DNA of 64,000 nt from positions 124,001-188,000 of IMG/VR virus record IMGVR_UViG_3300048672_001051, one strand, 5' to 3'. How positions within the stretch are numbered: the stretch's first letter is position 1; each line of letters opens with the position of its first letter. The position numbers and the translations under genes were made by a program. Positions 7,161 to 26,736 of this stretch are shown here, one piece after another. The notes beneath the pieces were generated by a model that did not search any database, was not told the origin of the DNA, and was given only the letters and a program-made list of their open reading frames with translations.

Positions 7161-7234
7161 GGTTTCGAATGCGGGATTTGAACCCGCGATGACGCCTTGA
7201 AAGGGCATTGTTATAACCGCTTAACTAATTCGAA
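7161..7234 (-). tRNA. tRNA-Glu(TTC)
   Basis: Cloverleaf; anticodon loop CT-TTC-AA; T-loop TTCAAAT; ends CC-T. Confidence 0.9.
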
Positions 7235-10161: not shown

Positions 10162-10207
10162 TGGTTGGCCGGGAGGGATTTGAACCCTCGATACCCTGAT
10201 TAAAAGT
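10162..10207 (-). pseudogene. 3' half of a canonical tRNA-Lys(TTT), positions 31-76
   Basis: A-CT-TTT-AA-TCAGG, T arm, CCGGCCA-A-CCA; 5' half missing. Confidence 0.85.
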
Positions 10208-10215
10208 GTAAATAT

Positions 10216-10289
10216 TGGTTGGCCTTGAAGGTATTGATCCTTCTTCTGGAAATTAAAAGTTTCCTGCATCACCTTAATGCTTAAAGCCA
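10216..10289 (-). tRNA. tRNA-Lys(TTT), divergent variant
   Basis: GGAAA-CT-TTT-AA-TTTCC; T-loop ATCAATA; CCA. Confidence 0.85.
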
Positions 10290-10296
10290 ATTATAC

Positions 10297-10325
10297 TTGA
10301 CAATATATTATAAACATAATATAGT
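10297..10325 (+). promoter_or_regulatory. Sigma70-type promoter for HNH gene
   Basis: TTGACA-N17-TATAGT. Confidence 0.7.
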
Positions 10326-10391
10326 AGTAGTTCAATAGTTAGTAGTAAACTACTAACTCAACTTACAATTAAAATTAAAGAGTATCATATT

Positions 10392-10904
10392 ATGAATAAA
10401 CAAATATTATTAGATTTTATTAAACAAAATAAATCTTCTAGACAAATTGCAGAAGAACTTCAAGTATCACAAACAACTATTAGATATTGGCTTAAAAAAT
10501 ATAATTTAAAAACTAAAATATACACACAAATTATAGATAATAAAAAAGTTTGTACTAAATGCAATATTAATAAAGAAATTTCAGAATATTATTTTAAAAA
10601 TAAAAAACATAAAAATATGCACTCGGAATGTAAACTGTGTTTTAATTCTAGAATTACCGAGCAGTTTAGAGATTTAAAAACACAGTGTATAGAATACAAA
10701 GGATCTAAATGTCAAATTTGCGATTATAATAAATATCAAGGAGCTTTAGAATTTCATCATTTAGATCCAAATGAAAAAGATTTTGCTATTTCAGCAGCAA
10801 CTTCAAGGTTGTTAAATGAAACAATGAAAAAAGAATTAGATAAATGTATATTAGTTTGTTCGAATTGCCATAAAGAAATTCACGCTAAACTAGTTGATAT
10901 TTAA
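10392..10904 (+). CDS. Freestanding HNH homing endonuclease with N-terminal HTH
   Basis: RQIAEELQVSQTTIRYWL HTH; CQIC...LEFHHLDP...CSNCHKEIH. Confidence 0.88.
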   Translation: MNKQILLDFIKQNKSSRQIAEELQVSQTTIRYWLKKYNLKTKIYTQIIDNKKVCTKCNINKEISEYYFKNKKHKNMHSECKLCFNSRITEQFRDLKTQCIEYKGSKCQICDYNKYQGALEFHHLDPNEKDFAISAATSRLLNETMKKELDKCILVCSNCHKEIHAKLVDI

Positions 10905-10929
10905 ATTTTCTACCACTGAAATATACTCC
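10905..10929 (-). pseudogene. 5' tRNA fragment (acceptor strand plus D arm)
   Basis: TGGAGTA-TA-TTTC-AGTGGTA-GAAA; perfect D stem; partner 3' half unclear. Confidence 0.5.
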
Positions 10930-10979
10930 AAAATTGCTTATTTTAAAAAATAACCACTAATCTACCGACCAATTGTGTG

Positions 10980-11970: not shown

Positions 11971-12567
11971 ATGCTAAAAGAAACATCTTTAAAAGAGAAA
12001 ATAATTGATTTAAGAAATCAAAATTTAAGTTACAGAGAAATTTCTGAAAAACTTAACTGTACAAAAAGTGTAATATGCTATCACCTTACAGAAAAAGAAA
12101 AACAGAGAGTTGCAGATTCGACTAAAAAATTTAAAGAAAATAACCCTTTAAGTACAAAATTAACTCAATTTACAAGAGAGCAAGCAAAAGGACTTAATAA
12201 TAAAGCTCTTAAATTCTCTCAAGATAGAGAGATTAGAAAAGGCTTAAAATTACATAAAGATGGTGAAAATTATATAAATTATAAAAATCTTTATGAAGAG
12301 TTAATAAAAAAGCCTTATTGTTATTTAACTGGTGAAAGTGTTGATTTAACAAAGTCAGCAGATTATCAACTAGATCATATTATACCTATTTCAAAAAATG
12401 GTAGTTCTACTCTAGATAATATGGGGTTAACAACTAAAGCAGCTAATAAAGCTAAAAGCGATCTAACTTTAGAAGAGTTTTTTGATTTATGCGCAAGTGT
12501 TATTGTTCATAATAATTTAATGCCTTTAGTGGAGGCAAAACTTGCCAATAAAATATTAGCAAAATAA
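11971..12567 (+). CDS. Freestanding HNH homing endonuclease with N-terminal HTH
   Basis: LSYREISEKL HTH; CYLTG...LDHIIPISKNG...NMGLTTKAANKAK. Confidence 0.88.
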   Translation: MLKETSLKEKIIDLRNQNLSYREISEKLNCTKSVICYHLTEKEKQRVADSTKKFKENNPLSTKLTQFTREQAKGLNNKALKFSQDREIRKGLKLHKDGENYINYKNLYEELIKKPYCYLTGESVDLTKSADYQLDHIIPISKNGSSTLDNMGLTTKAANKAKSDLTLEEFFDLCASVIVHNNLMPLVEAKLANKILAK

Positions 12568-12568
12568 G

Positions 12569-12647
12569 TGGCTGCCCATCTAGGTAACGATCCTAGCTAT
12601 TCATTGTTTAACAGACAAGTCCGTGCACCATGCTCGGATTATGGGCA
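12569..12647 (-). tRNA. tRNA-Asn(GTT)
   Basis: TTGT-CT-GTT-AA-ACAA; T-loop ATCGTTA; CCA. Confidence 0.88.
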
Positions 12648-12716
12648 AAAATTTGAAGTTATGTTTTAAATGCACATAACTTCAACTACAACAAGAAAAT
12701 ATAAAGTTAAAAAATT

Positions 12717-13240: not shown

Positions 13241-13999
13241 ATGACTACATTACCAAAATATTACATTACAACTCAACATGAAATTGACAACATGAAATCA
13301 AATTCTTTAATTTTTATTAATTGTGAGTATTGCAATACAGAGTTTTCACTGCAAAAGAAGTATTTAACATTACAGCTTAAAAATCAAAACACTTACAGAA
13401 CAACATGCAGTGGAAGTTGTTTTATAAAGCTTAAATCAATAGACTCTAAAGTAATTACAAATTGTAAAACATGCGATAAAGAAATTACTAAAACAAAAAA
13501 AGAAATAGAAGGATCTAAGTCAGGTTTTGTTTTTTGCTCTAGTTCTTGTGCAGCTAAAACAAATAATATCACAAGTAAATTAAAATACTCAATTAAAAAT
13601 TGTTTAAACTGTCTTGTAGATTATAAACCTACAAGATGTAGAGATAGTGGAACATGTTCTCAATTTTGTTTAATGGAGTATGGCATGAAATCAAGAAAAT
13701 TATCAGACGTAGTTAAAAGAACTCATTCAAATAAATACGACGGCGTTAGAAGTAATGCAAGGCTTTACGCTAAATACCACTATTTACCAAAATGTGCACT
13801 ATGTAATTATGATAAACATTTTGAAGTTTGTCATATAAAAGCTTTAACTAATTTTAATAATAATGATTCATTATTTGAAATTAACAATAAAACTAATTTA
13901 ATCCATTTATGTCCAAATTGTCATTGGGAGTTTGATCACAATTTAATACAGCTTGAAACTATAGTTAAAGCACAAGTAGAAAGTTTGCTAGTCTTGTAG
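13241..13999 (+). CDS. Freestanding HNH homing endonuclease with Zn-finger repeats
   Basis: Multiple CxxC; CALC...EVCHIK...LCPNCHWEFDH. Confidence 0.88.
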   Translation: MTTLPKYYITTQHEIDNMKSNSLIFINCEYCNTEFSLQKKYLTLQLKNQNTYRTTCSGSCFIKLKSIDSKVITNCKTCDKEITKTKKEIEGSKSGFVFCSSSCAAKTNNITSKLKYSIKNCLNCLVDYKPTRCRDSGTCSQFCLMEYGMKSRKLSDVVKRTHSNKYDGVRSNARLYAKYHYLPKCALCNYDKHFEVCHIKALTNFNNNDSLFEINNKTNLIHLCPNCHWEFDHNLIQLETIVKAQVESLLVL

Positions 14000-14667: not shown

Positions 14668-14741
14668 TGGAGCGGTGTGGCAGATTCGAACTGCCAACTA
14701 TTGGTTGGAAGCCAAGGTGCTGACCGTTACACTACAGTCCC
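14668..14741 (-). pseudogene. tRNA-Gly(TCC) with non-pairing (chimeric) acceptor stem
   Basis: D, anticodon (CT-TCC-AA) and T arms normal; 5' GGGACTG pairs with 3' ACACCGC at only 2 of 7 positions. Confidence 0.75.
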
Positions 14742-14760
14742 CATCACATTACAACAAAAA

Positions 14761-14847
14761 GGCAGAGTGCAGTGGACTCGAACCACAACCGTAAAAACAA
14801 TCACGTTGCTTAGCAGGCAAGTCTTAACCCAGTTAAGTTTACACTCT
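14761..14847 (-). tRNA. tRNA-Ser(GCT)
   Basis: TTGC-CT-GCT-AA-GCAA; long arm; G73. Confidence 0.88.
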
Positions 14848-15007
14848 ATTTAATTGACAATTATATGCTTCTTTTGCCGTTTAGACATGCTGTACATATC
14901 TTTAGCATTAAGAACATCTTTATATGTTGCTTTAAGAGCTTTAGATAATAACTCAGAAAACTCTTTTAAGTCAATAACTTTTTTCATATTTTTAACAATA
15001 ATAAAAA

Positions 15008-15124: not shown

Positions 15125-15979
15125 TTAACGATTGCAGTAAGCTTGATAATCTTTAATCCAATTTGGAAATTCAGTTAGAAGTTTATCATACAGCTGCTCG
15201 TCAGTAATTGAAGACAAAGAGTCTACTTCAAAGAAGTTGCAGTTGTCAACAGCACGACCTGACATTGTATCAAGATGCTCAAGAATGCCGTAATTGCTGC
15301 CACCCAAACCTACAAACTGCCAGAAAATATTTTCTGTAGAAGCCTGACGGATTAGTTTAGTAATTTCAGCGTCTTTATAGACGCCACCATCACTGATGAA
15401 AATAACGTAGGTTGGTAAACCATTAGTTTCATTTTTATGGTTGGCAATAACTTCATGAATAACTTTTGGCTCATCATTTGAAAAACCAATACCTACGCCA
15501 CTGCCAGCACGGCTCAAGCTTACATTCTTAACGTAGTCTGCGATTGTAGTTAAAGTAATGCTAGGCATTTGGCGAGTCTTACAAGCGAACGCATGACACT
15601 CTAAAATGCCGTCAGGATCGAAATGAGTGGCTAGTGGTACTACACGGTCAAGAACACCCTGAACAGCGCCTGAGCCGTATTGTGAGGTCATAGAGCCAGA
15701 CGCATCAAGAACAATAACAACATTTGCTTTAACTGTAGTTAAGTTATTTTTAACCAAACTAATTGCAGCCGTTTTTGCAAAATTCAGCAAGCTTGGATTT
15801 TGAGTTTCGTACTTTTTAACAAAGTCTAATGTGCTGCTAGGGCGTTCGCCAGCGGCAAACATTTCAAGAGGAGATTTTGAAGGTTGCGGCTTAACAGCTG
15901 GAGTTGGACTTACAGGGGCAGGTGGTTCTGCTACAACAGCAGCAGGTTTACTACCAAAGAGATTTGAAAAAAAGCTCAT
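15125..15979 (-). CDS. vWA domain protein (vWA-TerF-like, Ter stress system)
   Basis: MIDAS VLDASGSM; FISDGG; FWQFVGLG; LEHLDTMSGRAVDNCNFF. Confidence 0.88.
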   Translation of the reverse strand: MSFFSNLFGSKPAAVVAEPPAPVSPTPAVKPQPSKSPLEMFAAGERPSSTLDFVKKYETQNPSLLNFAKTAAISLVKNNLTTVKANVVIVLDASGSMTSQYGSGAVQGVLDRVVPLATHFDPDGILECHAFACKTRQMPSITLTTIADYVKNVSLSRAGSGVGIGFSNDEPKVIHEVIANHKNETNGLPTYVIFISDGGVYKDAEITKLIRQASTENIFWQFVGLGGSNYGILEHLDTMSGRAVDNCNFFEVDSLSSITDEQLYDKLLTEFPNWIKDYQAYCNR

Positions 15980-16189
15980 AGATTACTCGTAAAAAATCTG
16001 AAGAATATTCTTCATTAGAAATAAAGGCTGATGTTTGTATCAAACATCACTAGGGAGTTACTGCAACTGAAGGGCAGAGTGGCTGATGATTTAGGAATAA
16101 TTCACTAACATTGTATGTAGTAACTGATACAACAACTGTAATAATCACCCAAAACCATTGACGGCTTGTAAGTACAACCATAATACATC

Positions 16190-16480
16190 CTAAAGTTTAT
16201 TGACAAATCTGGATGATTTTAAGTCAACTGGAGATACATCATTTATCAAATACTGATAGAGTTCGTCAGTAAGTTTGATTGTTCTCAAATAAATTTGAAA
16301 AGCGTAGTCAACATTTTCATGCTTATAATGAAAATAACTAACTTCTAAATCAATACTAACATCATACAGAAAATGATGATCACCACCATGAAAATTCTCT
16401 ACAGCATTTTCAAATGCTTCAATAATTTTTTTAGAAGAACTATCATTAAATAAGTCTTTCATTATAAAACGTTTAATCAT
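16190..16480 (-). CDS. Hypothetical protein
   Basis: 96-aa ORF in operon. Confidence 0.6.
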   Translation of the reverse strand: MIKRFIMKDLFNDSSSKKIIEAFENAVENFHGGDHHFLYDVSIDLEVSYFHYKHENVDYAFQIYLRTIKLTDELYQYLINDVSPVDLKSSRFVNKL

Positions 16481-16488
16481 ATTAAGTC

Positions 16489-16767
16489 TTAATCTTTTTT
16501 CCGAAATTGCCAGCCAGAAGTATGTGCATAATACATAACTGTTTTTAAGTCTGAACTTACATAAACTTTACGGCTACTTTTTAAAGTCTGATAAAAAACT
16601 TTAAAAAGTTCTTGTTGCTTGTTAAGTTCTACAGTAGTCAAAGCGGTTGAGAGTCTGTTAAACAGGGGATGTTGTATAACATTAAGTTGCTTAGCTAGCG
16701 CTAAAGCATCTGATAAACAGCCATTAATTAAAAGAAACTCAATAACAGAATCATTAAGCTTATTCAT
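16489..16767 (-). CDS. Hypothetical protein
   Basis: 92-aa ORF in operon. Confidence 0.6.
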   Translation of the reverse strand: MNKLNDSVIEFLLINGCLSDALALAKQLNVIQHPLFNRLSTALTTVELNKQQELFKVFYQTLKSSRKVYVSSDLKTVMYYAHTSGWQFRKKD

Positions 16768-16787
16768 AATAAAATCTCTCGAATATG

Positions 16788-16900
16788 TGGCAGTAGACCA
16801 AGGACTTGAACCTAAAAGATATTTATTTTAAATATCTCACAGCACCATTTTAAATAACAGTAACTAGTATGTTAAATAAACTTGACCTGTGGGGTCTACC
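16788..16900 (-). ncRNA. Atypical tRNA-like element
   Basis: Acceptor GGTAGAC/GTCTACT, G73, CCA, T-loop TTCAAGT, AT-rich hairpin arm; no recognisable D or anticodon arm. Confidence 0.5.
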
Positions 16901-16906
16901 ATAATT

Positions 16907-17416
16907 TCAGCTTAAAATTTTTAACAAATCTGGAACTGCACTAGTCATACAATAAAACTGATTGACTTGGACTTGTAGAGTTTGACGCATAAAATGCGAA
17001 AAATTATCTAATCCTTTTTGTCGATCGTCAGTAATTAGATGAACTCTTGCAAATTTTAATTGATTAACAACATCAAAAACAATATTTGCTGGAAAAATAA
17101 ATTCTTTTACATTAAAAGGATCTAATGTAAAGGAATAAGTTCTTAAATTAATGTTAATATTTAATTTATTAACAGTAATAAATTCAAACCAGACTAAAAT
17201 CTCCGGTGTTAGAACAACTTTATCATTTATAGTATTTGCTTTAAAAAAAAGACCATTGACAGCTAATACATTATTTAAAAACTCTAATCGCTGTGTAGCA
17301 GAAAATGTGGCTATAAGCCACAAATGAGGCTCAAGATTTCTTTTTTGACTATTTAAAAAACTTAAAAGCGTAGGAAAGCTTGAGCCGTGAAAACTTTCAA
17401 AAAAATGATTATTCAT
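16907..17416 (-). CDS. Hypothetical protein
   Basis: 169-aa ORF. Confidence 0.65.
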   Translation of the reverse strand: MNNHFFESFHGSSFPTLLSFLNSQKRNLEPHLWLIATFSATQRLEFLNNVLAVNGLFFKANTINDKVVLTPEILVWFEFITVNKLNININLRTYSFTLDPFNVKEFIFPANIVFDVVNQLKFARVHLITDDRQKGLDNFSHFMRQTLQVQVNQFYCMTSAVPDLLKILS

Positions 17417-17475
17417 TTTTAAAGCAACCTATAATATGGGAGTACTCTCGAGATTTGGACTAGTTCTAAAAAACT

Positions 17476-18165
17476 TTAATTTATTAAATCTAGCGTGCTT
17501 TTAACAAAATACAAATCTTGCAAAGATTTTTCAATATCTTTTAATTGAGCTTCATGTCTAAGACGTGGTGAAATACATTCTAAAATATTATTAAAGTATT
17601 CAGAGTCAGACAAACAACGACTATAAAAATCAATGTAAACTTGAGTAATAAGTTTACTTAGTTTTAATAGATTCTTTTCTGTATTATCATTGATTTTAAA
17701 AACTCTAGAGTAATTTTCTGAAATACACATTGTTGGAAAATATTTTAAATCAGTAACTAAGTTTTCATACCAAAAATCATAATTAAAAATATTTTCAGGT
17801 GTTAAAAATACTATAGAGTTAATTTTTTCATCTGTTTCTTTTAAAGCTTTTTCCCACTGCTCTTCTTCAGTTAATTTTAAAAAATTATTTATACGTTTTC
17901 TAGATTTGTAATTTTCTTCAAGTCTATTTTCTATATAAACATTTTCATAATATTGAAGGCACCTTTCTGGTGTTTGTACATCTTTATAGTACTCTGTAAA
18001 AGGAATGTGCCTGTAAAATTGAACAGACTCTACTGGATTACCTTCTACAAAATCAACTCCATTCCCTATAGTAAATAAAAAATGGCTTAATACATCAATC
18101 GGTTTTGAAAAACCTGCTGTATATTTAATTTGAGTTTCAGTTACATATTGAATTAAATAACTCAT
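17476..18165 (-). CDS. Hypothetical protein
   Basis: 229-aa ORF. Confidence 0.7.
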   Translation of the reverse strand: MSYLIQYVTETQIKYTAGFSKPIDVLSHFLFTIGNGVDFVEGNPVESVQFYRHIPFTEYYKDVQTPERCLQYYENVYIENRLEENYKSRKRINNFLKLTEEEQWEKALKETDEKINSIVFLTPENIFNYDFWYENLVTDLKYFPTMCISENYSRVFKINDNTEKNLLKLSKLITQVYIDFYSRCLSDSEYFNNILECISPRLRHEAQLKDIEKSLQDLYFVKSTLDLIN

Positions 18166-18186
18166 TTTTAAATTAACCTGGAATAT

Positions 18187-18244
18187 TGGTCGGCGCAGTC
18201 GGAATCGAACCGACGGTGTACCATTACGATGTACGCGATTCGAA
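18187..18244 (-). pseudogene. 3' half (33-76) of a class II-bodied tRNA with TCG (Arg) anticodon
   Basis: T-TCG-AA-TCGC, long arm, GTCGG-TTCGATT-CCGAC, TGCGCCG-A-CCA. Confidence 0.8.
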
Positions 18245-18253
18245 CTAAGAATT

Positions 18254-18280
18254 TGGTATCACGAACGGGATTCGAAACTG
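18254..18280 (-). pseudogene. Degenerate tRNA 3' end fragment
   Basis: TTCGAAT T-loop plus acceptor strand and ACCA. Confidence 0.55.
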
Positions 18281-18288
18281 TACTATAT

Positions 18289-18339
18289 TGGTGTGGGTAG
18301 GGAGAGTCGAACTCCCAAGGCCGAAACCTGTCAGATTTT
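18289..18339 (-). pseudogene. 3' half (35-76) of a tRNA-Leu-like gene
   Basis: AA-AA-TCTGA, AGGT-TTCG-GCCT arm, T arm, TACCCAC-A-CCA. Confidence 0.75.
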
Positions 18340-18378
18340 CTTACCACTATAGTGTAGGTTTTGGTATACAGTATAAAC

Positions 18379-18407
18379 TTGTAATTTATGTGTATAGCTG
18401 TTATAAT
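18379..18407 (+). promoter_or_regulatory. Sigma70-type promoter reading antisense through tRNA-Leu into the endonuclease gene
   Basis: TTGTAA-N17-TATAAT with extended -10 TGn. Confidence 0.65.
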
Positions 18408-18411
18408 ATAT

Positions 18412-18497
18412 TGGTGGGCGCGACAGGACTTGAACCTGCATGCTTTAAAGCGGGACTGTTTAAGAATCCTGAGTCTACCTGATTTCTCCACACGCCC
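18412..18497 (-). tRNA. tRNA-Leu(TAA)
   Basis: GGATT-CT-TAA-AC-AGTCC; long arm; CCA. Confidence 0.9.
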
Positions 18498-18526
18498 AAT
18501 AAATTAAAACTAATAAAGGATTAAAA

Positions 18527-19285
18527 ATGAATCAATTATCAAAAGAACAATTATATAGTTTATATATAAATTATTATCAAACAAATATAAGTAAATTAAA
18601 AACTGCTAAAGAAACTAAAATAGATCGCAGTACAGTAAGAAAATACTTTAATTTATTTCAAACTTCTAATATTGAAGATATTATAAATACAACACACTCA
18701 GAACTTGCTTCATTAAAAGACTATATAAATAGCTGGTCAGTAGTTGAAAAACGTTGTTATACTTATATTTTAGCACAATATTTTGGGGATGGCTATATAA
18801 ATAAAACAGCCAGAACTTGGAAATTAAGGATTTCCAATGATAAAAAATATGAAAATATAAACTGTCTTATAGAAGATTGTCTTACTACTTTATTTCCAAA
18901 CAATTGTGTATCAAGGATTAATAAAACAGGGTGTTGGGATATTTGCGTTCACAGTAAAAAACTCCCTATTTTATTTCCTCACTTAGGGCAGGGTAAAAAA
19001 CATGAAAGAAAAATAAGTTTAACAACAGAACAATTAGAACTATTAAAAATGTATCCTAAGGATTTTATCTTAGGTTGTTTACATTCCGATGGTGCTAAGT
19101 GTAAAAGAAAAACAACAAATCACTTTTATCAATTTACTAATTTATCTTTAGATATAAAAGAATTTTTTGAAATTGCTTGTAGTTGTATAGGCATACCACT
19201 TAAAAATATTAAAGCTAAAAATGTTTATATTTATAAAAGAGAATATATAAATATTATAGATTCATTTTATATTGATAAATCTTAA
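18527..19285 (+). CDS. Freestanding LAGLIDADG-type homing endonuclease with N-terminal HTH
   Basis: YILAQYFGDGYI and FILGCLHSDG motifs. Confidence 0.8.
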   Translation: MNQLSKEQLYSLYINYYQTNISKLKTAKETKIDRSTVRKYFNLFQTSNIEDIINTTHSELASLKDYINSWSVVEKRCYTYILAQYFGDGYINKTARTWKLRISNDKKYENINCLIEDCLTTLFPNNCVSRINKTGCWDICVHSKKLPILFPHLGQGKKHERKISLTTEQLELLKMYPKDFILGCLHSDGAKCKRKTTNHFYQFTNLSLDIKEFFEIACSCIGIPLKNIKAKNVYIYKREYINIIDSFYIDKS

Positions 19286-19293
19286 TTTTAACA

Positions 19294-19313
19294 ACCTGCT
19301 TCGCCATGCGCCG
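19294..19313 (-). pseudogene. 5' fragment of the split Arg(TCG) tRNA
   Basis: CGGCGCA-TG-GCGAAGCAGGT; pairs 7/7 with acceptor strand TGCGCCG at 18191-18197. Confidence 0.8.
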
Positions 19314-19624
19314 ATATGTTTCTAACAACAATATAAAATCTTCTGGCTATATTTTCGTATACAGCATATCTGTTTTGTTAAAAGATCCGGACCTTTCAGA
19401 TGTTTTTACTCTTAAACTACAGAAGATAAACTACTTATTACAAAATTTTTGCAGTGCAAACTGCTTTGTAATCCGTATAAAAACGTGTATTAAATAACTT
19501 AGTTTGTACTTGTTTCGCTTCTAAGCAAGCTTTAGGCGTTGAATACTCTTGAGAGCCGCTAGAAACACTGTCAGTGCTACTTACAAGAACCCAAGTTAAA
19601 ATCCAAATATTCATACAAAAGTCC

Positions 19625-19840
19625 TTAAATAATAAATTCGACAGTACTTGGTGCTGTCACCATGTAATAAGTTTCTTTAAAAAGTTTTAAAGAAACACTT
19701 ACGTTTTTAAACGGAATTTTATCACGAAAAGCATTAATCAAATTTGGTAAAGATTCTGCAAGAGCTAGTTTAATATCAACTAATCCAGACTCTTTTTCTT
19801 TATCCAATAACTTTAAAAGTTCTTGTTTAAAGTTAATCAT
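19625..19840 (-). CDS. Hypothetical protein (start moved to MINFKQ)
   Basis: 71 aa after trimming overlap with upstream gene. Confidence 0.5.
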   Translation of the reverse strand: MINFKQELLKLLDKEKESGLVDIKLALAESLPNLINAFRDKIPFKNVSVSLKLFKETYYMVTAPSTVEFII

Positions 19841-20054
19841 ATGTAATCGTCCGTTGTTTAAAAGTTGCACTACTAGTAGTGCTATTTTCGCAACGTGCAA
19901 TGTAAAGTCTTTCGGCATTAACCCACAATTTTGTTAATGCGCAGTCTTCAAAACCTGAACGTAAATTTAATTCACGCTCAGCTTCTTCTATAGACGTACA
20001 GCCTTGTAAAAAAGCTAAAAACACTGCAGCAATAATAAAACTTTTAATTTTCAT
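19833..20054 (-). CDS. Small lipoprotein
   Basis: Signal peptide with lipobox LQGC. Confidence 0.7.
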   Translation of the reverse strand: MKIKSFIIAAVFLAFLQGCTSIEEAERELNLRSGFEDCALTKLWVNAERLYIARCENSTTSSATFKQRTITYD

Positions 20055-20180
20055 AAGTAATCCTAGTTATAAAGTCATGCTTACTGAACAGCTTCAGCAG
20101 CTTTAAACATTTTATCAATAATAATTTCAAGCTCATCGAGTAAAAGATGAGCTTGTTTAATAAGTTCTGGCATAAATACC

Positions 20181-20717
20181 TCAACAATATTGTGAGTGGT
20201 TATTTGGTGCAATACAAAAATTGTTAGTCAACAGTTTAAAACAACCTTGAGGTACAATTTTTGAAAGCTTGATATACTCATTGGCATTTAAAAGTTCACG
20301 CACAAGTGTGCCTGAAATGTTTAAATCTGATGTAAAATCACAAAAAGTAACTTTTGGATTTAACTCTAAAATTTGATTTAAATATGTAGTAGTACTTAAG
20401 TCTTTCTTAGAACCCGCTAAATGACTGATATCAAAAAGATCAATGAGTTTTGAAACAGACTGTAGCCAGCTGTTGGTGTCTAAGTCATCGTATAACGGTA
20501 TAAATAAGAATTTATCTGCGTCATCAGATGAAAAAGAATTTTTAATACAGTTGACTCTAAAATTAAAATCAAATGGATTTAAATCGTCTACAATACCTAC
20601 GCCTATAGCGACAACAACATTGTTCAAAGTTTTATTCAAAGCTTGTTGAAGTTGCTGAAAATGTCCATTATGGAAACCTTGAAAACGCCCAACAATTAGA
20701 AAATTTGAGTTAATCAT
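20181..20717 (-). CDS. NMN adenylyltransferase (NadM-like, HxGH nucleotidyltransferase)
   Basis: GRFQGFHNGH and ISGTLVRE motifs. Confidence 0.8.
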   Translation of the reverse strand: MINSNFLIVGRFQGFHNGHFQQLQQALNKTLNNVVVAIGVGIVDDLNPFDFNFRVNCIKNSFSSDDADKFLFIPLYDDLDTNSWLQSVSKLIDLFDISHLAGSKKDLSTTTYLNQILELNPKVTFCDFTSDLNISGTLVRELLNANEYIKLSKIVPQGCFKLLTNNFCIAPNNHSQYC

Positions 20718-21195
20718 TTTGACAACCTTGAAGCTTTTTAATTAAATTATCAGCAACTTCAGCAGTAAAACCATAACTATTATCAATTTTTAGAAACTTA
20801 GTTTCATGTTGATAACTTGCATCAGAATCGTCGTCTAAGACGTAGTAATCTTCACAAGTGTTATTGGCTAACCAGTCGGAGATTTGCAAGCCACGGGCAA
20901 TTAAGCCCGCGCGCTTACGGTGTTCTTCAGGTACTAAATCTTTGCAAGTTGTTGAACCAACAACTTCTGCTGTTAAACCCATTGATTTACAAACTATCTG
21001 TAAAGTTTGAAAGTCATATAGTTTGCGCCAACTACTGCTGACAACTATTTTAAAATTACAAACATCAGTTAAGCGATTAATATTTGCAATTAATATTGGA
21101 GAATAAGAATCAATATCATTAGATTGTAATGTTACTAAGTCTGTCGACTCACAAGCATTTATAACACCATCAAAATCAAGAAAAAGAATTTTCAT
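20710..21195 (-). CDS. HAD-family phosphatase (RNA-repair type)
   Basis: FLDFDGV, VVSSSWR, VLDDD; start trimmed to exclude tRNA-Trp. Confidence 0.85.
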   Translation of the reverse strand: MKILFLDFDGVINACESTDLVTLQSNDIDSYSPILIANINRLTDVCNFKIVVSSSWRKLYDFQTLQIVCKSMGLTAEVVGSTTCKDLVPEEHRKRAGLIARGLQISDWLANNTCEDYYVLDDDSDASYQHETKFLKIDNSYGFTAEVADNLIKKLQGCQND

Positions 21196-21209
21196 GTCTA
21201 AACTCAAAA

Positions 21210-21284
21210 TGGCAGCTATGCACGGACTCGAACCGCAACTAATGGTTTTGGAGACCATTGTCCTGCCAATTAGACGACATAGCT
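21210..21284 (-). tRNA. tRNA-Trp(CCA)
   Basis: ATGGT-CT-CCA-AA-ACCAT; CCA. Confidence 0.93.
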
Positions 21285-21291
21285 ACAACAA

Positions 21292-23829
21292 TTAACGATA
21301 CATTTTTGTTAAATATTTTGTTAACAAAAACTGTGCGTGTAAATCAGAACGCTCTTCTGCGTACTCAATTTCTAACTCAGTTGAAAGCTCTTGTAAACGT
21401 TTATCAATTTTAAGTAATAAAGAGTCAAGGCTAAAAGTCATTTCATTTAAACCTACCACTTTTAAACCTGCCAAAGTTTTTAAACGTGATATGGCAACAT
21501 AACCCTGACCTTTTTCAAAAACTTTTGATAAATCTATCTCAGCTTCGTCTAAACTCATACCTTGACAGTTTGACATTACAAAGCCATTTTGAATAAAATT
21601 TCCAGCATTTGGAACCTCAACACATTGCGATTCAAGTTCAATATTGACTAAATTTTCAATTCGAACGTAATAAAAATCTAACAAGTCAGAACAAATTGAA
21701 GGTACATAATCTCTAGTGACGTAACCTCTTTTTAAACTAGCTTTATACATTGTATAAGATATGTATTTATTCGTATACCAATTTAAAAGAGTTTCCTTAG
21801 TTACTGGAACTCTACTATTAGAATCAGTTCTGATAATAGTGTAATTTAAAAGTCTTTGTTGATTAAATTTATTTATAAATCCGACATAATCTCTAAAAAG
21901 CTTGCAGTACTTACCATAAATATATAAATAAGTAATGTTATCTTTTTTTGATATTGTACAAGCAATCCCTACACGTAATAAGACTTGCTGTACAAATTGA
22001 CAAACAGTAAAAGATTTATTAGCAAATTCAATGTGATCTACTTTACTTTGTTTAATATTTACAGTGCCGTCTTCATAAAGACCTTTTAAAAAAGATAACT
22101 GAACAGAAAGGGGTGATTGTTTTATAATATGAGGAACTTGTTTTAAATTTGAAACTAATTCAGGACACCACTCATTCAGTATATAATGAGAAAGATGACG
22201 AGAACAGACTTCAAATTGATAAAAATCTTTACCACCCACATTTAAAATTCTAATAGGGTTATCAACGACATTAAATAAATTAATACATAATTGTTTAAAA
22301 CGTTCTACTGTTTCAATATGTTTTTTAGTTAAGCTAAAAGAACTTTTTCTAACAGTTCCGTCAGCTAAAAGCAATCCTAAGAATTCTGAGAAATTTTCAT
22401 CAAGTACTTCTGGTAATTTGTATTTTACAGTGCGTACATCAAATATTTTTGAAGTCGCAGATGACAATTTTAAATAAGGACTATTACATGTTTGATTAAG
22501 TTTCAGTTTAAGCCATTGACCTACAATAAGCTCTTTAGCTTCTACATAATTCCAAGAATCTCCAGTAAAAGCTAAGCACTTGTGAGAATCAGTGACCTTA
22601 ATACTATAGTTACGCTCACAAATAATTTCTTTTCCAGTTAGTAAGTGGTTATTAACTTTATTAACATAAGGCAACACTTCAAACTCAGTTTGTATTGCGC
22701 CTGACTCTTGTATATCTTTAATCTGCAATAAGCCTTGAGTAGTATTAACATAAGTGTCAGGATGAATACACTTATGGACTGTTATAGCGTAAGCAAGCGT
22801 TAAAGGCACTTGAGTATAAGTAGCGGTGTTACCAGCGCCATTGTTTTCAAAACGCCATTCAACAGGGTCGGCAGTCACTGTTAATCCTGTTGTTAATTTA
22901 ACTTTAGGATAATATTGACCATTAAATCTTTCAAAACCTACGACTGTACCTTGAGACCCATTAGCGTACTGTCCATTTATGTTGTCATTTTTAACAAACA
23001 TAACTTTAGTGTTAAGTTTTAATTCAAGAACTTCAGGAGCTTTAATATTTGCTTTTAACATATCTACAAATATAGATTTACCTGTAGTTTTAGCCTTATT
23101 AGTATACACAATACCTGGCAGGGCATCAAAATGTTGTTTATTAATAGCTGTAACGTCTCTGTTGTGAGTATACAACTTTAAAGGATTTGTGAGCGTATTT
23201 GAAGAAGTCGCAGCAATAATATCAATGTGCTCTTGAGTGACAGTTTGAGATCTTATTGCATTTAAAATATCATTTAACTTATCACCATCAGCTTGACGAT
23301 ATTGTTTTGTTAAGTAGCAAGACTTAAAATTTGCTCTAACCCAAACAGGTGACATAAAGCAAAATTTATCGCGATTGGCTTCACCATTAGTACTAACTGG
23401 TGGTAATTGTAGCCCATCACCAGCTAATATAACTTGAAGACCGCCAAATGGTTTTTCACTCTGCCGTAGCCTACGTAGTACAAAATCAATTGCTTCAAAC
23501 TGATCTTTGTGCAACATAGATATTTCATCAATAACTAAAACGCGAGCTTTAATTATCTTCATGTATTTTATTTGATTTTTCTTAATCTTGTCGACATGTG
23601 TTTGTGTAATGTGGCTTTTAATTCCAATGCCAGTCCAAGAGTGAATTGTCTGACCATCAATATTTGTAGCTGCAATACCTGTAGACGCAGTAATAGCGTA
23701 AGGCACGTTACGAGCTTTAAGATAGTCTAAATACACTTTTAAAGTATAAGATTTACCAACACCTGCAGAGCCAGTTAAAAATACATTGGCACCTGTTTTA
23801 AGAATATTTAAAGCAGTTGTTTGATCCAT
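21292..23829 (-). CDS. Pif1-family SF1B helicase precursor containing an intein
   Basis: GSAGVGKS, IDEISM, GDGLQLPP, AITVHK|CQG, YVAISR. Confidence 0.92.
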   Translation of the reverse strand: MDQTTALNILKTGANVFLTGSAGVGKSYTLKVYLDYLKARNVPYAITASTGIAATNIDGQTIHSWTGIGIKSHITQTHVDKIKKNQIKYMKIIKARVLVIDEISMLHKDQFEAIDFVLRRLRQSEKPFGGLQVILAGDGLQLPPVSTNGEANRDKFCFMSPVWVRANFKSCYLTKQYRQADGDKLNDILNAIRSQTVTQEHIDIIAATSSNTLTNPLKLYTHNRDVTAINKQHFDALPGIVYTNKAKTTGKSIFVDMLKANIKAPEVLELKLNTKVMFVKNDNINGQYANGSQGTVVGFERFNGQYYPKVKLTTGLTVTADPVEWRFENNGAGNTATYTQVPLTLAYAITVHKCIHPDTYVNTTQGLLQIKDIQESGAIQTEFEVLPYVNKVNNHLLTGKEIICERNYSIKVTDSHKCLAFTGDSWNYVEAKELIVGQWLKLKLNQTCNSPYLKLSSATSKIFDVRTVKYKLPEVLDENFSEFLGLLLADGTVRKSSFSLTKKHIETVERFKQLCINLFNVVDNPIRILNVGGKDFYQFEVCSRHLSHYILNEWCPELVSNLKQVPHIIKQSPLSVQLSFLKGLYEDGTVNIKQSKVDHIEFANKSFTVCQFVQQVLLRVGIACTISKKDNITYLYIYGKYCKLFRDYVGFINKFNQQRLLNYTIIRTDSNSRVPVTKETLLNWYTNKYISYTMYKASLKRGYVTRDYVPSICSDLLDFYYVRIENLVNIELESQCVEVPNAGNFIQNGFVMSNCQGMSLDEAEIDLSKVFEKGQGYVAISRLKTLAGLKVVGLNEMTFSLDSLLLKIDKRLQELSTELEIEYAEERSDLHAQFLLTKYLTKMYR
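21568..22770 (-). mobile_element. 401-aa intein with LAGLIDADG endonuclease
   Basis: Starts CIHPDT after TVHK, ends FVMSN before Cys+1; FLGLLLADG and FLKGLYEDG motifs. Confidence 0.92.
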
Positions 23830-24823: not shown

Positions 24824-24900
24824 TGGAGCTTGTGCAGAGACTTTAACTCTGTATCACTGGATTTGCAATCCAGTCCCTCGAACACTTCGGGTTAACAAGC
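24824..24900 (-). tRNA. tRNA-Cys(GCA)
   Basis: CTGGA-TT-GCA-AA-TCCAG; atypical T-loop TTAAAGT; T73; CCA. Confidence 0.85.
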
Positions 24901-25114: not shown

Positions 25115-25130
25115 AAAAATACCTTAAAAA

Positions 25131-25261
25131 GTACAAGGCCAGGACTCGAACCTGGAACCAGCTGATTGGTCGATGTAAACCTTTACTACAACACTCTATG
25201 GAGGTTAAAAGTGCAAAAGTTACTTTTTGTCGGCTGCTCTACCGATTGAGCTACCCTGTAC
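25131..25261 (-). ncRNA. tRNA-shaped RNA with about 60-nt insert in place of the anticodon loop; candidate Y (Yrl) RNA
   Basis: Acceptor (G)TACAGGG/CCTTGTA(C), canonical D and T arms, no CCA, followed by U run; starts 11 nt after TROVE stop. Confidence 0.75.
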
Positions 25262-25272
25262 TATTTTAAAAC

Positions 25273-26736
25273 TTAAACTGAAAGTGTATTAATTAACACT
25301 TCAGCATCACCAGACATGCTAAGGTATTGTAAGATGTTGTCGCTATAGCCTGCAAACTGAGTCCAACCATTAGATGGCTGTGCAGCAGATGTAGGTGAGC
25401 GGCCCATATTAAAAGCAAATTTATGCTCAATACTTCTAAAAAAGCTGTCAAAAGAATTGCCAGTGGCTAAAGACTGCAGCTGCATGTCTGAAAACATGAA
25501 CACAGTGTCTAATTCAACATTTGGAATGTTGTCAACAATACTTGCTAAATTAGTTCCACCGCCGACATCAAAGTGTTTAATCTTATTAATGATATCTTGA
25601 TAAGAATCACTAACAGACACTTCAATATTTTTAGAGAATGTGCCAAAGGTTGTAATGTAAACTGGTATGTTGTAATTATGTAATGATTTACAAATCACAG
25701 CAGCCAGAAAAGCACTATTATTCATTGGAATGCCCTGCATTGACAAGCTTGCGTCAACAACTAACCAACAAGCTCGTTTAGAAACTTGTGGAACATTGTC
25801 AATAGCGTAGCCCAAAGCTTGCACTAACTCGCTTTTGTACGATTGCGTTTGGTCGATAGCTGAATAAAACTGATATGGATACAGTTTTGCTCTAGCTACT
25901 GAACGACGATCGACAAGTTTTGAGCGAATTAAACTTTGAATTTCAGTTAAGCTTTCTGAAGCAACAAGCATACTAATAGACATGCGTTCGATATTAGCTA
26001 AGTTTTTAAGCAAAGCTTGATAACCGAGTTTATTGTTGCGTAGAAGGCTTAACCAACTGTCAATTCGAGCTTGAGGTGTTGAATTTTGCGAACTATCACT
26101 AAGCAAAACTTCGTGAGTGTCAGGTTTTTCTAAAGTATTATTTAAAATACATTTAAAAATACGTGACTGCTCAGAATCCTTAGGTTGAGGCCTTGCTGTT
26201 AAAATAAGAAACTTCAAATTGACATTGTTAATCTTTCGGTTATATTTGCCAAATTGATAAGCATCAAACTTATTTAAACCAACTTCCAAAGATTTTTTTA
26301 CAATTTTAGGAAGTTCTTTAGGCAGCAAACCGCCTGCAAGTAAATTACCAACTAGTTTCAACATGTCATCGACACGATAAAAATACTCGCCAATCAACTT
26401 ATAAGAGTTTGGAGGAAACTCAGTACAAGTTAAAAGATAGCTAGTTAGTAAATCTAAAGGTGCTTGTTTTAACCCAAGTATATGCCGTGCAAAAATAGCC
26501 AGATTAAAAACAAATTTACTTTCACCTGCAGCGTGTAAGTCTGCAAGTAGTTTAATAACAACAGTCTGAAGTTCAGTCTGTGTGTGGTAAAAAGTATCAC
26601 CTTTAATTAAACTGTTCAACACAATGTTTAAAAGTTGTTGTTTAGAGCTTAAAGTTAGTTGAGGATTCCCCTCAAGAGAAATTGACATTTTTGTCATTTG
26701 AACATCGCCTTTTAAAAGGGAAATGCTGACTTTCAA
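25273..26736 (-). CDS. Ro60/TROVE domain protein with C-terminal vWA
   Basis: FGKYNRK, THEVLLS, YQALLKNLANI, LYPYQFYSA, VVDASLSM, GGTN, FSDMQ. Confidence 0.85.
   Translation of the reverse strand: MKVSISLLKGDVQMTKMSISLEGNPQLTLSSKQQLLNIVLNSLIKGDTFYHTQTELQTVVIKLLADLHAAGESKFVFNLAIFARHILGLKQAPLDLLTSYLLTCTEFPPNSYKLIGEYFYRVDDMLKLVGNLLAGGLLPKELPKIVKKSLEVGLNKFDAYQFGKYNRKINNVNLKFLILTARPQPKDSEQSRIFKCILNNTLEKPDTHEVLLSDSSQNSTPQARIDSWLSLLRNNKLGYQALLKNLANIERMSISMLVASESLTEIQSLIRSKLVDRRSVARAKLYPYQFYSAIDQTQSYKSELVQALGYAIDNVPQVSKRACWLVVDASLSMQGIPMNNSAFLAAVICKSLHNYNIPVYITTFGTFSKNIEVSVSDSYQDIINKIKHFDVGGGTNLASIVDNIPNVELDTVFMFSDMQLQSLATGNSFDSFFRSIEHKFAFNMGRSPTSAAQPSNGWTQFAGYSDNILQYLSMSGDAEVLINTLSV

What the first reader, a model, noticed from the sequence alone, without database searches (positions are those of the whole stretch)
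18187..19313. A tRNA gene split around an endonuclease cassette that carries its own promoter and a complete tRNA
Seen, in minus-strand order: a 5' tRNA fragment (19294-19313), a LAGLIDADG gene on the opposite strand, an intact tRNA-Leu(TAA), a sigma70 promoter (+ strand), a Leu-like 3' half cut in the anticodon, another 3'-end stub, then a 3' half with TCG anticodon. The acceptor strand of that last half pairs 7/7 with the 5' fragment 1.1 kb away. The two longer 3' halves begin at positions 33 and 35. Inference: repeated insertions into anticodon loops by cassettes of promoter, replacement tRNA and nuclease, leaving a stack of fossil halves. Established: freestanding endonucleases spread phage tRNA regions (T4 SegB). 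The nested anticodon-targeted scars are the new part.
Basis: partly seen in the sequence, partly recalled or inferred. Interest (0 to 1): 0.75.

Follow-up and report, generated by a model that had tools for sequence, protein, structure and literature searches.

The report
Nuclease-plus-tRNA cassette splitting a phage tRNA
In a 230-kb freshwater phage, a selfish nuclease gene that travels with its own leucine tRNA gene has landed inside another tRNA gene and left its pieces behind. Relatives show that this nuclease family sits beside (sometimes around) leucine tRNA genes almost everywhere it occurs.

Summary

**Confirmed**
- The + strand ORF 18527-19285 is a free-standing homing endonuclease: an N-terminal helix-turn-helix (HTH) plus a double LAGLIDADG core with both catalytic Asp kept.
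- Together with a promoter-like site and tRNA-Leu(TAA) it forms a roughly 940-bp unit (18351-19291).
- That unit recurs at about 88-90% identity in a second metagenome contig whose flanks are different on both sides.
- In the window it sits between a 22-nt 5' tRNA stub (19313-19292) and, 1.1 kb away, the matching 3' part (about 18249-18187). The acceptor pairs 7/7, and the 7-mer occurs once on that strand in the window.
- Two orphan 3' tRNA pieces lie in between.

**Changed**
- The 5' stubs end in the D-loop or D-arm (about positions 21-26), not in the anticodon loop.
- The "TCG anticodon" reading is doubtful. The split gene looks Leu-type.

**Added**
- A second locus (HNH nuclease with tRNA-Lys, 10162-10971) has the same nested layout.
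- In 25 of 25 lineages of this nuclease family a tRNA-Leu gene is the nearest tRNA (one of them recognised by eye, not by a caller).
- Several lineages carry Leu-type 5' stubs that end after the D-arm.
- In three lineages a tRNA sits in frame inside the ORF.

**Verdict:** a new variant of the known association between homing endonucleases and phage tRNA genes. Cleavage of tRNA-gene DNA is inferred, not shown.

The parts
19292..19313 (-). 5' stub of split tRNA gene X. Acceptor strand CGGCGCA, then T8 G9, D-stem GCG(A), D-loop AAGCAGGTTG. It ends in the D-loop and abuts the cassette boundary.
   Evidence: Sequence. The 7-mer is unique on this strand in the window. The D-arm is Leu-type when compared with tRNA-Leu genes.
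18527..19285 (+). Free-standing homing endonuclease gene, 252 aa: N-terminal HTH plus two LAGLIDADG motifs (catalytic D88 and D188).
   Evidence: - 1084 homolog clusters.
- 57 of 62 aligned homologs hit PF14528; D88/G89 and D188/G189 are invariant.
- The family profile hits I-DmoI and I-AniI.
- AF2 pLDDT 93; Foldseek top hits are I-WcaI, I-SceI and I-DmoI.
- dN/dS 0.15 against the L002 copy.
18498..18526 (.). 29-nt gap between the tRNA 5' end and the ORF start. It contains the ribosome-binding site AAAGGA.
   Evidence: 29/29 identical to L002, although synonymous divergence of the ORF is 0.46.
18412..18497 (-). Intact tRNA-Leu(TAA) carried inside the cassette.
   Evidence: ARAGORN and Rfam 42.4 bits. 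84/87 identical to L002, with a compensatory 4:69 change from C-G to T-A.
18379..18407 (+). Promoter-like site (TTGTAA, 17 nt, TATAAT, TG upstream). It points through the antisense of the tRNA into the nuclease ORF.
   Evidence: Best match in the region. L002 keeps TTGTAA-17-TACAAT despite two 3-nt insertions in this spacer (alignment A1). Function is inferred.
18351..19291 (.). The whole mobile cassette: spacer, promoter, tRNA-Leu(TAA) and nuclease ORF plus about 6 nt.
   Evidence: Alignment with L002: homology starts at 18351 and ends about 19290. Both flanks are unrelated.
18289..18350 (-). Orphan 3' tRNA piece (a): long variable arm, T-arm, acceptor TACCCAC, A73, CCA. Leu-like, with an uncertain start. 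No 5' partner nearby: the window's minus strand has none, and the few copies of the 7-mer elsewhere in the genome are tens of kb away.
   Evidence: It lies directly outside the cassette boundary and is absent from L002.
18254..18276 (-). Orphan 3' stub (b): T-loop TTCGAAT, T-stem strand CCCGT, acceptor TCGTGAT, A73, CCA.
   Evidence: Sequence. The upstream T-stem strand does not pair.
18187..18249 (-). 3' part (c) of split tRNA gene X. Certain: T-arm, acceptor TGCGCCG, A73, CCA (18214-18187). Upstream: a hairpin and a loop-like CTTAGTT whose register is uncertain.
   Evidence: The acceptor pairs 7/7 with the stub at 19313.
10951..10971 (-). Second locus: 5' stub of an old tRNA-Lys (TGGTCGG TA GATT AGTGGTTA), ending at position 21.
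   Evidence: It pairs 7/7 (one G-U) with CCGGCCA of the Lys 3' half. This motif occurs 8 times on the minus strand per 230 kb.
10907..10930 (-). Second locus: another 5' stub with a complete D-arm (TGGAGTA TA TTTC AGTGGTA GAAA), 2 nt from the nuclease stop codon.
10392..10904 (+). Second locus: HTH-HNH nuclease gene, 170 aa.
   Evidence: Pfam HTH_28 above its cut-off; HNH hit weak and below its cut-off. A 38%-identical homolog sits beside a tRNA-Met in relative L007.
10216..10289 (-). Second locus: resident tRNA-Lys(TTT), with an unusual T-loop ATCAATA.
   Evidence: ARAGORN, Rfam 47.9 bits, sequence.
10162..10206 (-). Second locus: 3' half of the old tRNA-Lys. It starts exactly at the anticodon loop (CTTTTAA) and has a canonical T-arm, acceptor CCGGCCA, A73 and CCA.

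Best explanation
A free-standing homing endonuclease gene (HTH plus double LAGLIDADG) belongs to a family that lives next to tRNA-Leu genes. Here it forms a roughly 940-bp unit with its own promoter-like site and a working tRNA-Leu(TAA).

The likely mechanism is as follows.
1. The nuclease cuts tRNA-Leu-type gene DNA in or near the D-arm in phage genomes that lack it.
2. Repair copies in the nuclease gene together with the linked tRNA allele, which is presumably resistant to cutting.
3. When homology is short, because the recipient gene is only distantly similar, one or both joins are imprecise. The ends of the recipient tRNA gene then survive as dead stubs.

In this phage the unit landed in a Leu-type tRNA gene X. 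About ten nucleotides between the D-loop and the anticodon loop were lost. Two further orphan 3' pieces, (a) and (b), are left from earlier events of the same kind, either carried in with the unit or already present.

Shown: the parts, the two contexts of the unit, the nuclease fold and catalytic residues, the matching ends of X, the family-wide link to tRNA-Leu, and the recurrent stub end point.

Inferred: that this nuclease makes the cut, where it cuts, that the resident tRNA is immune, that the promoter works, and the order of events.
For: - **Cassette in two contexts.** 18351-19291 aligns with L002 at about 88-90% with unrelated flanks. In both, the nuclease 3' end abuts a 5' tRNA stub cut in the D-loop.
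- **Selection on the parts.** dN/dS is 0.15. The tRNA is 84/87 identical with a compensatory pair. The 29-nt gap is identical.
- **Nuclease identity.**
- **Split gene X.** The acceptor pairs 7/7 with a 7-mer that is unique in the window. The stub has a Leu-type D-arm and X has A73.
- **Replicate in the same genome.** An old tRNA-Lys is split around an HNH nuclease plus a new tRNA-Lys, with a second stub nested inside.
- **Family link.** tRNA-Leu is the nearest tRNA in 9 of 9 contigs fetched by protein identity. It is also nearest in 16 of 16 IMG/VR loci: 15 by ARAGORN and L039 from the sequence.
- **Recurrent stubs.** Orphan Leu-type 5' stubs ending after GGTAGAC or GGCATAC lie next to the nuclease in L026, L031, L032, L040 and L044. 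In L044 the stub (1371) and a T-arm/acceptor stub right after the stop codon (2179) match each other and bracket the ORF.
- **Precedent.** T4 SegB cuts tRNA genes at the T-loop motif and drives inheritance and amplification of tRNA genes. Co-location of segB homologs with phage tRNA genes is widespread (PMC2330249, PMC13096335).
- **Assembly.** An independent Logan assembly of one run holds all sampled words of 17400-20400.
Against: - No uninterrupted allele of X, and no relative lacking the cassette at this site, was found.
- Pieces (a) and (b) have no 5' partners near the locus, so their history is a guess.
- The 3' break points vary (C32, T-arm, T-loop). No single cut site explains all the scars without resection or imprecise joining.
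- The second locus has an HNH enzyme, not a LAGLIDADG enzyme, yet a similar geometry. The geometry may therefore reflect repair at conserved tRNA blocks rather than the cut site of one enzyme.
- No biochemical data exist for this family.
Confidence: 0.72

Rival explanations
1. The tRNA pieces are ordinary decay of a tRNA array: deletions, slippage, or recombination between conserved tRNA blocks. The nuclease genes are only bystanders that prefer the same permissive region.
For: The array also holds debris that is not next to a nuclease gene. Examples are a T-arm/CCA stub near 16810, a Gly(TCC)-like gene at 14670-14745 with only 4 of 7 acceptor pairs, and an orphan T-arm at 25150. Relatives L006, L007 and L010 keep an orphan T-arm stub.
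Against: Both clearly split genes (X and the old Lys) bracket exactly one nuclease-plus-tRNA unit. The cassette boundary defined from L002 abuts the X stub to within a base or two. The same family shows stubs at the same tRNA coordinate in unrelated contigs.
Confidence: 0.13
2. The 3' halves are attachment-site scars of integrase-driven elements. Such elements classically target tRNA genes at the anticodon loop or T-loop and duplicate the 3' part of the gene.
For: The old Lys half starts exactly at the anticodon loop and stub (b) starts at the T-loop. These are the two classical integrase crossover sectors (established knowledge; an example of an anticodon-loop attB is in PMC3706429). The N-terminal HTH resembles transposase and resolvase HTH domains.
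Against: No integrase or recombinase catalytic domain was found in the ORFs scanned near the two loci. Conservative site-specific integration keeps an intact tRNA and loses no bases, whereas here positions 22-31 or so are missing and dead 5' stubs remain. The only enzymes inside the inserts are LAGLIDADG and HNH nucleases.
Confidence: 0.05
3. The fragments are kept because they work. They could be decoys or substrates for host anticodon nucleases or the phage RNA repair system, processing signals in the long minus-strand tRNA transcript, or a tRNA assembled from two separate pieces.
For: The acceptor and T-arm of pieces (a), (c) and the Lys half are perfect and end in CCA followed by a recurrent ATAT trailer. 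All lie on the transcribed strand of the array.
Against: Piece (a) is not part of the conserved cassette. No Rfam intron or other RNA family was found in 16000-22000. Folding energies are no better than shuffles. Positions 22-31 are missing under the favoured readings of piece (c), so the two parts of X would not make a whole tRNA; the D-loop reading leaves this open. No relatives were available to test conservation and no RNA data exist.
Confidence: 0.07
4. Assembly artefact: a metagenome assembler joined unrelated tRNA-containing pieces at short shared tRNA motifs.
For: The genome is a metagenome-assembled IMG/VR contig.
Against: Shared tRNA motifs here are under 20 nt, which is too short to mislead assemblers. 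A separate Logan assembly holds 100% of the sampled 31-mers of 17400-20400. The cassette itself is confirmed by L002 and by a 151-nt contig from a third run.
Confidence: 0.03

Closest known systems
T4 SegB, a free-standing GIY-YIG homing endonuclease in the T-even tRNA gene cluster
   Same: A free-standing nuclease gene inside a phage tRNA array. Its target lies within tRNA genes. It drives inheritance and amplification of neighbouring tRNA genes, and the nuclease and tRNA move together (PMC2330249, PMC13096335).
   Different: - A different nuclease fold: LAGLIDADG plus HTH, not GIY-YIG.
- Isotype-specific linkage to tRNA-Leu, whereas the segB association favours no isotype.
- The inferred site is the D-arm, not the T-loop motif.
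- Here the insertion destroyed a tRNA gene and left stubs, which was not described for SegB.
Monomeric double-motif LAGLIDADG homing endonucleases (I-DmoI, I-SceI, I-AniI, I-WcaI)
   Same: The fold and the two catalytic acidic residues.
   Different: Those enzymes are encoded in introns. This one is free-standing, on the strand opposite to its neighbouring tRNA, and has an added N-terminal HTH of transposase or resolvase type.
Group I intron in the anticodon loop of cyanobacterial and plastid tRNA-Leu(UAA) (own knowledge)
   Same: A mobile insertion in a tRNA-Leu gene.
   Different: No group I ribozyme was detected. The ORF is on the opposite strand. The insert contains a whole tRNA gene. The 5' part ends in the D-loop and bases are missing, so it cannot be spliced.
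Integrase attachment sites in tRNA genes
   Same: Duplicated 3' parts of tRNA genes that start at the anticodon loop or T-loop.
   Different: There is no recombinase, 5' stubs are left dead, and bases are lost at the join.
Split tRNA genes of Nanoarchaeum (own knowledge)
   Same: The 5' and 3' parts of one tRNA are encoded apart.
   Different: Those halves are complete, carry complementary leaders and are joined by the archaeal splicing machinery. Here about 10 positions are missing (under the favoured readings) and no joining system is evident.

Membership tests
LAGLIDADG homing endonucleases | Two LAGLIDADG motifs, each with a conserved acidic catalytic residue | tested here: met
   D88/G89 and D188/G189 are invariant in 62 aligned homologs. 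The motifs read YFGDGYI and LHSDGAK.
LAGLIDADG homing endonucleases | Pseudo-dimeric alpha-beta-beta-alpha-beta-beta-alpha fold | tested here: met
   AF2 pLDDT 93. The top 50 Foldseek matches listed are all LAGLIDADG-fold proteins, mostly homing endonucleases plus a maturase and WhiA, with probability 1.00. The profile matches I-DmoI over residues 77-250. 57 of 62 homologs hit PF14528.
LAGLIDADG homing endonucleases | Site-specific double-strand cleavage of a long DNA target | not testable with these tools
   Needs protein and substrate DNA.
Free-standing homing endonuclease genes of phages (SegB type) | Not inside an intron or intein; own expression signals | tested here: met
   No intron family in 16000-22000. 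The ORF is on the strand opposite to the tRNAs. A promoter-like site and a ribosome-binding site are conserved with L002.
Free-standing homing endonuclease genes of phages (SegB type) | Presence/absence polymorphism between related genomes, with co-transfer of flanking markers | tested here: inconclusive
   The same unit, including the tRNA, occurs in two unrelated flanks. Relatives L007 and L010 carry different nuclease-plus-tRNA-Met units between identical flanks. No empty site for this cassette was found.
Free-standing homing endonuclease genes of phages (SegB type) | Cuts the allele that lacks the nuclease gene, near the insertion point | not testable with these tools
   Only inferred, from stubs that end at the same tRNA coordinate.
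Group I intron in a tRNA gene | Ribozyme core between two exons that rejoin into a complete tRNA | tested here: not met
   No Rfam intron match at E up to 10. Under two of the three readings of piece (c) the two parts lack positions 22-31 or so; only the D-loop reading gives a whole cloverleaf. The insert holds an opposite-strand ORF and a tRNA.
Integrase attachment-site scar | Tyrosine or serine recombinase nearby; exact repeat; intact tRNA restored | tested here: not met
   No recombinase domain in the ORFs scanned near the two loci. The tRNA is not restored and bases are lost.

The most novel reading that the evidence does not exclude
Nuclease-plus-tRNA units are the vehicle by which phage tRNA arrays are built and renewed. 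A large, uncharacterised HTH-LAGLIDADG family is dedicated to tRNA-Leu genes in phages and even in bacterial chromosomes. It overwrites resident alleles with the one it carries, and in one subclade the tRNA is encoded in frame inside the nuclease ORF, so the two can never be separated. The stacked stubs would then be a readable record of successive overwrites. They might also be expressed as tRNA-like decoys against host tRNA-cutting defences.
Probability: 0.25. Interest if true: 0.8.

Novelty: new variant of a known kind. Interest (0 to 1): 0.62.

Why it matters
Phage tRNA genes are now seen as counter-measures to host tRNA-cutting defences, and SegB showed that a homing endonuclease can move and amplify them.

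This locus adds three things:
- a second, unrelated nuclease family with a strict link to one isotype (Leu);
- a unit that carries its own replacement tRNA;
- natural footprints (stubs ending at one tRNA coordinate) that predict where the enzyme acts.

That gives a directly testable target for an uncharacterised family with more than 1000 sequence clusters. It also offers a way to read the history of tRNA-array turnover from sequence alone.

Tried and rejected
**Searches for relatives or an intact allele that found nothing useful**
- blastn and tblastn of the region and the ORF against GenBank phages: no match. The neighbouring 229-aa protein found only 22%-identical Vibrio phage hits.
- Single-protein scans of IMG/VR: nothing.
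- Exact-pattern scans for an intact copy of tRNA X: none in viral contigs or genome contigs. Three hits in metagenome contigs were chance matches in GC-rich coding DNA, not tRNAs.
- The spacer pattern in viral contigs found nothing. The T-arm pattern found only unrelated jumbo-phage tRNA-Leu(TAG) genes.
- Laying contigs of four runs on 17000-20600 showed only the L002-type cassette, and neither an empty nor an uninterrupted site.

**Methods that did not discriminate**
- The AF2 model from the single sequence was useless, pLDDT 34.
- ARAGORN on artificial joins of the two parts of X called a tRNA for nearly every join, so it cannot choose between readings.
- Rfam on 18170-18411 recognised only the T-arms.
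- RNA folding of the pieces gave no signal above shuffles.

**Considered and dropped**
- I considered that a GTGG segment at the start of piece (a) is its own acceptor 5' strand. It forms only 4 pairs and has z = 0, so I rejected it.
- I did not run a protein-DNA complex prediction. Any tRNA-Leu gene of the nuclease-carrying genome should be immune, and no unaltered susceptible allele was available.
Full report
**Setting.** The window is bases 124001-188000 of a 229,656-bp IMG/VR viral contig, 35% G+C, estimated 98% complete. The only run holding it is a freshwater metagenome. All of its tRNA genes lie on the minus strand between window positions 7161 and 24900. Four nuclease genes sit in this array on the opposite (+) strand. 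Each starts near the 5' end of a tRNA gene:
- an HTH-HNH gene at 10392-10904, next to tRNA-Lys;
- an HTH-HNH gene at 11971-12567, next to tRNA-Asp;
- an HNH_2 gene at 13241-13999, next to tRNA-Met;
- the ORF of the finding at 18527-19285, next to tRNA-Leu(TAA).

**The observation.** Reading the minus strand from 19313 down to 18187, the order is:
- A 22-nt 5' tRNA stub: CGGCGCA, TG, GCGA, AGCAGGTTG.
- The ORF in antisense.
- An intact tRNA-Leu(TAA) at 18497-18412 (ARAGORN; Rfam 42.4 bits).
- A 60-nt spacer that carries, on the + strand, the best promoter-like match of the region: TTGTAA, 17 nt, TATAAT, with TG upstream.
- Piece (a): long variable arm, perfect T-arm, acceptor TACCCAC, A73, CCA.
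- Stub (b): T-loop onward, acceptor TCGTGAT, A73, CCA.
- Piece (c): perfect T-arm, acceptor TGCGCCG, A73, CCA, ending at 18187.

The acceptor strand of (c) pairs 7/7 with the stub at 19313. That 7-mer occurs once on the minus strand of the window and four times in 230 kb. About 0.02 copies are therefore expected by chance within 1.2 kb upstream, before the tRNA-like D-arm that follows it is counted. Perfect GC-containing T-arms followed by 7 nt, one nt and CCA are found nowhere in the genome outside the tRNA region. The pieces are real tRNA-gene fragments.

**The nuclease.** Pfam does not hit the single sequence, but the protein has 1084 homolog clusters.
- In an alignment of 62 homologs, D88/G89 and D188/G189 are invariant, and 57 members hit LAGLIDADG_3.
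- The family profile matches I-DmoI over residues 77-250. It matches transposase and resolvase HTH domains over residues 1-56.
- The AF2 model built with the alignment has pLDDT 93. All 50 of its top listed PDB neighbours have the LAGLIDADG fold, mostly homing endonucleases.

It is therefore a free-standing HTH plus double-LAGLIDADG enzyme with its catalytic residues intact.

**The cassette is a unit.** One close homolog (87% amino-acid identity) lies on a 1237-bp contig from another run, L002.
- Window 18351-19291 aligns with it throughout. Both flanks are unrelated.
- Between the two copies the ORF has dS 0.46 and dN/dS 0.15.
- The tRNA is 84/87 identical, with a compensatory change at pair 4:69.
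- The 29 nt between the tRNA and the start codon are identical.
- A -35/-10 pair at 17-nt spacing is kept despite indels.

In L002 the nuclease 3' end also abuts a 5' tRNA stub cut in the D-loop. That stub is plainly Leu-like and differs from the resident tRNA. The unit of promoter, tRNA-Leu and nuclease has therefore moved, and both times it came to lie against the 5' end of a tRNA gene.

**What was hit, and where.** The stub of gene X has the D-arm typical of tRNA-Leu genes and X has A73. Piece (c) can be read in three ways.
This is an odd pairing of isotype and tRNA class.
- A join in the D-loop: TCGC pairs with the stub's GCGA, and the joined sequence folds as a complete cloverleaf, but with a 9-nt anticodon loop.
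- A start at C32 with the loop CTTAGTT (Leu, TAG), a 23-nt variable arm with a 6-bp hairpin, then the T-arm.

I favour the third reading, because it matches the second locus and the family's tie to Leu, but I cannot exclude the second. In every reading the 5' stub ends in the D-loop, so the break is not simply in the anticodon loop. The start of piece (a) cannot be fixed. It begins directly at the cassette boundary and is not part of the conserved unit.

**A replicate in the same genome.** Around the HNH gene at 10392-10904 the minus strand reads:
- a 5' stub of an old tRNA-Lys, ending at position 21 (10971-10951);
- a second 5' stub with a complete D-arm, 2 nt from the nuclease stop codon (10930-10907);
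- the nuclease in antisense;
- the resident tRNA-Lys(TTT);
- nine bases later, a canonical Lys 3' half that starts exactly at the anticodon loop (10206-10162).

The acceptor of that 3' half pairs 7/7 (one G-U) with the outer stub. Positions 22-31 are missing. This is the same nested layout with a different nuclease family.

**Family-wide evidence.**
- Every contig fetched for nine homolog lineages has a tRNA-Leu gene within about 100 nt of the ORF. One of them is a Micromonospora chromosome.
- Of 16 further IMG/VR loci, 15 have tRNA-Leu as the nearest called tRNA.
- The sixteenth, L039, has an uncalled Leu(TAG)-type gene just upstream of the ORF, recognised from its sequence.
- Orphan Leu-type 5' stubs ending right after the D-arm lie next to the nuclease in L026, L031, L032, L040 and L044.
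- In L044 a 5' stub at the ORF start and a T-arm/acceptor stub right after the stop codon match each other and bracket the ORF.

The recurrent end point at about positions 21-27 is the best available pointer to where this family acts.

**Mechanism.** The most economical reading is the known homing scheme for free-standing nucleases (SegB: PMC2330249, PMC13096335). It has two features special to this case: the linked marker is a tRNA-Leu gene that replaces the one hit, and imprecise joins in poorly homologous recipients leave stubs.

Shown:
- the parts of the locus;
- the mobility of the unit;
- the enzyme class;
- the matched ends of gene X;
- the isotype link to tRNA-Leu;
- the common stub coordinate.

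Inferred:
- cleavage of tRNA-Leu DNA by this protein;
- immunity of the resident allele;
- activity of the promoter;
- the order of events that stacked pieces (a) and (b).

The HNH locus has a similar geometry. Part of the pattern may therefore come from repair at conserved tRNA blocks rather than from one enzyme's cut site.

**Rivals.**
- *Plain decay of the array* is weakened because the split genes bracket the units so exactly.
- *Integrase scars* are weakened by the absence of any recombinase and by the loss of bases.
- *Functional halves* cannot be excluded but have no support: there is no conservation, no structural signal and no RNA data.
- *Misassembly* is unlikely.

**What failed.** No intact allele of X and no empty site were found in any collection. 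The history of this particular insertion therefore rests on one comparison (L002) plus analogies.

**Verdict.** This is a real and well-defined locus. It is a new variant of the known association between homing endonucleases and phage tRNA genes, with a strong and apparently undescribed tie between one LAGLIDADG family and tRNA-Leu.

Noticed in passing
L032:1459-2229, L044:1375-2175, L026:1501-2307: In three homolog lineages a tRNA-Leu gene lies inside the nuclease ORF, on the same strand and in frame, in the linker between the HTH and the LAGLIDADG core. Rfam scores are 60.5, 51.3 and 49.3 bits. In all three, tRNA base 1 is at codon position 1.
   Followed up: partly
L007:5413-6700 versus L010:900-1997: Two related phage contigs share identical flanks but carry different nuclease-plus-tRNA-Met units between them: an HNH with a 75-nt tRNA-Met versus an HNH_2 with a 90-nt tRNA-Met. 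The units behave as alleles at one site.
   Followed up: partly
window 10216-10289 and 12569-12648: The tRNA-Lys next to the HNH gene has the T-loop ATCAATA. An Asn(GTT)-like cloverleaf that abuts the stop codon of the second HNH gene has ATCGTTA and was missed by ARAGORN and Rfam. Both lack T54, while the dead Lys half keeps a canonical T-loop. These may be alleles resistant to a nuclease that targets the T-loop.
   Followed up: partly
window 14670-14745: A Gly(TCC)-like gene has good D, anticodon and T arms, but only 4 of 7 acceptor pairs. It looks like a chimera of two alleles. Rfam gives a partial hit of 33 bits.
   Followed up: partly
window 24827-24900 and about 14770-14858: Two tRNA genes were missed by ARAGORN. 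One is Cys(GCA), with Rfam 41 bits and a clean cloverleaf. The other is a likely Ser(GCT) with a long variable arm and no encoded CCA.
   Followed up: partly
window 21292-23829 (minus strand): A PIF1-type helicase gene is interrupted by an intein that carries a LAGLIDADG_3 domain. This is a second, unrelated LAGLIDADG element in the same array.
   Followed up: partly
window 16783-16815 and 25115-25155 (minus strand); L006:5307, L007:5504, L010:991: There are orphan T-arm-plus-acceptor stubs that are not next to a nuclease gene. The stub in the relatives is conserved in three contigs just downstream of the homolog of the 229-aa gene, and it is followed by a GC-rich 5'-stub-like segment ending in AAGCAGCGGTTG, similar to the end of the X stub.
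   Followed up: no
window 18181-18190, 18282-18291, 18403-18412, 10207-10218; L024:2725-2732: tRNA genes and fragments are repeatedly followed by CCA-ATAT(T), also in an unrelated phage contig. This may be a 3' processing context or part of a recombination or recognition site.
   Followed up: no
window 25273-26736 and 15125-15979 (minus strand): The tRNA array is interleaved with a gene for a TROVE/Ro-like protein with a vWA domain and a gene for a TerF-type vWA protein. Relatives have a tRNA-synthetase-like gene nearby.
   Followed up: no
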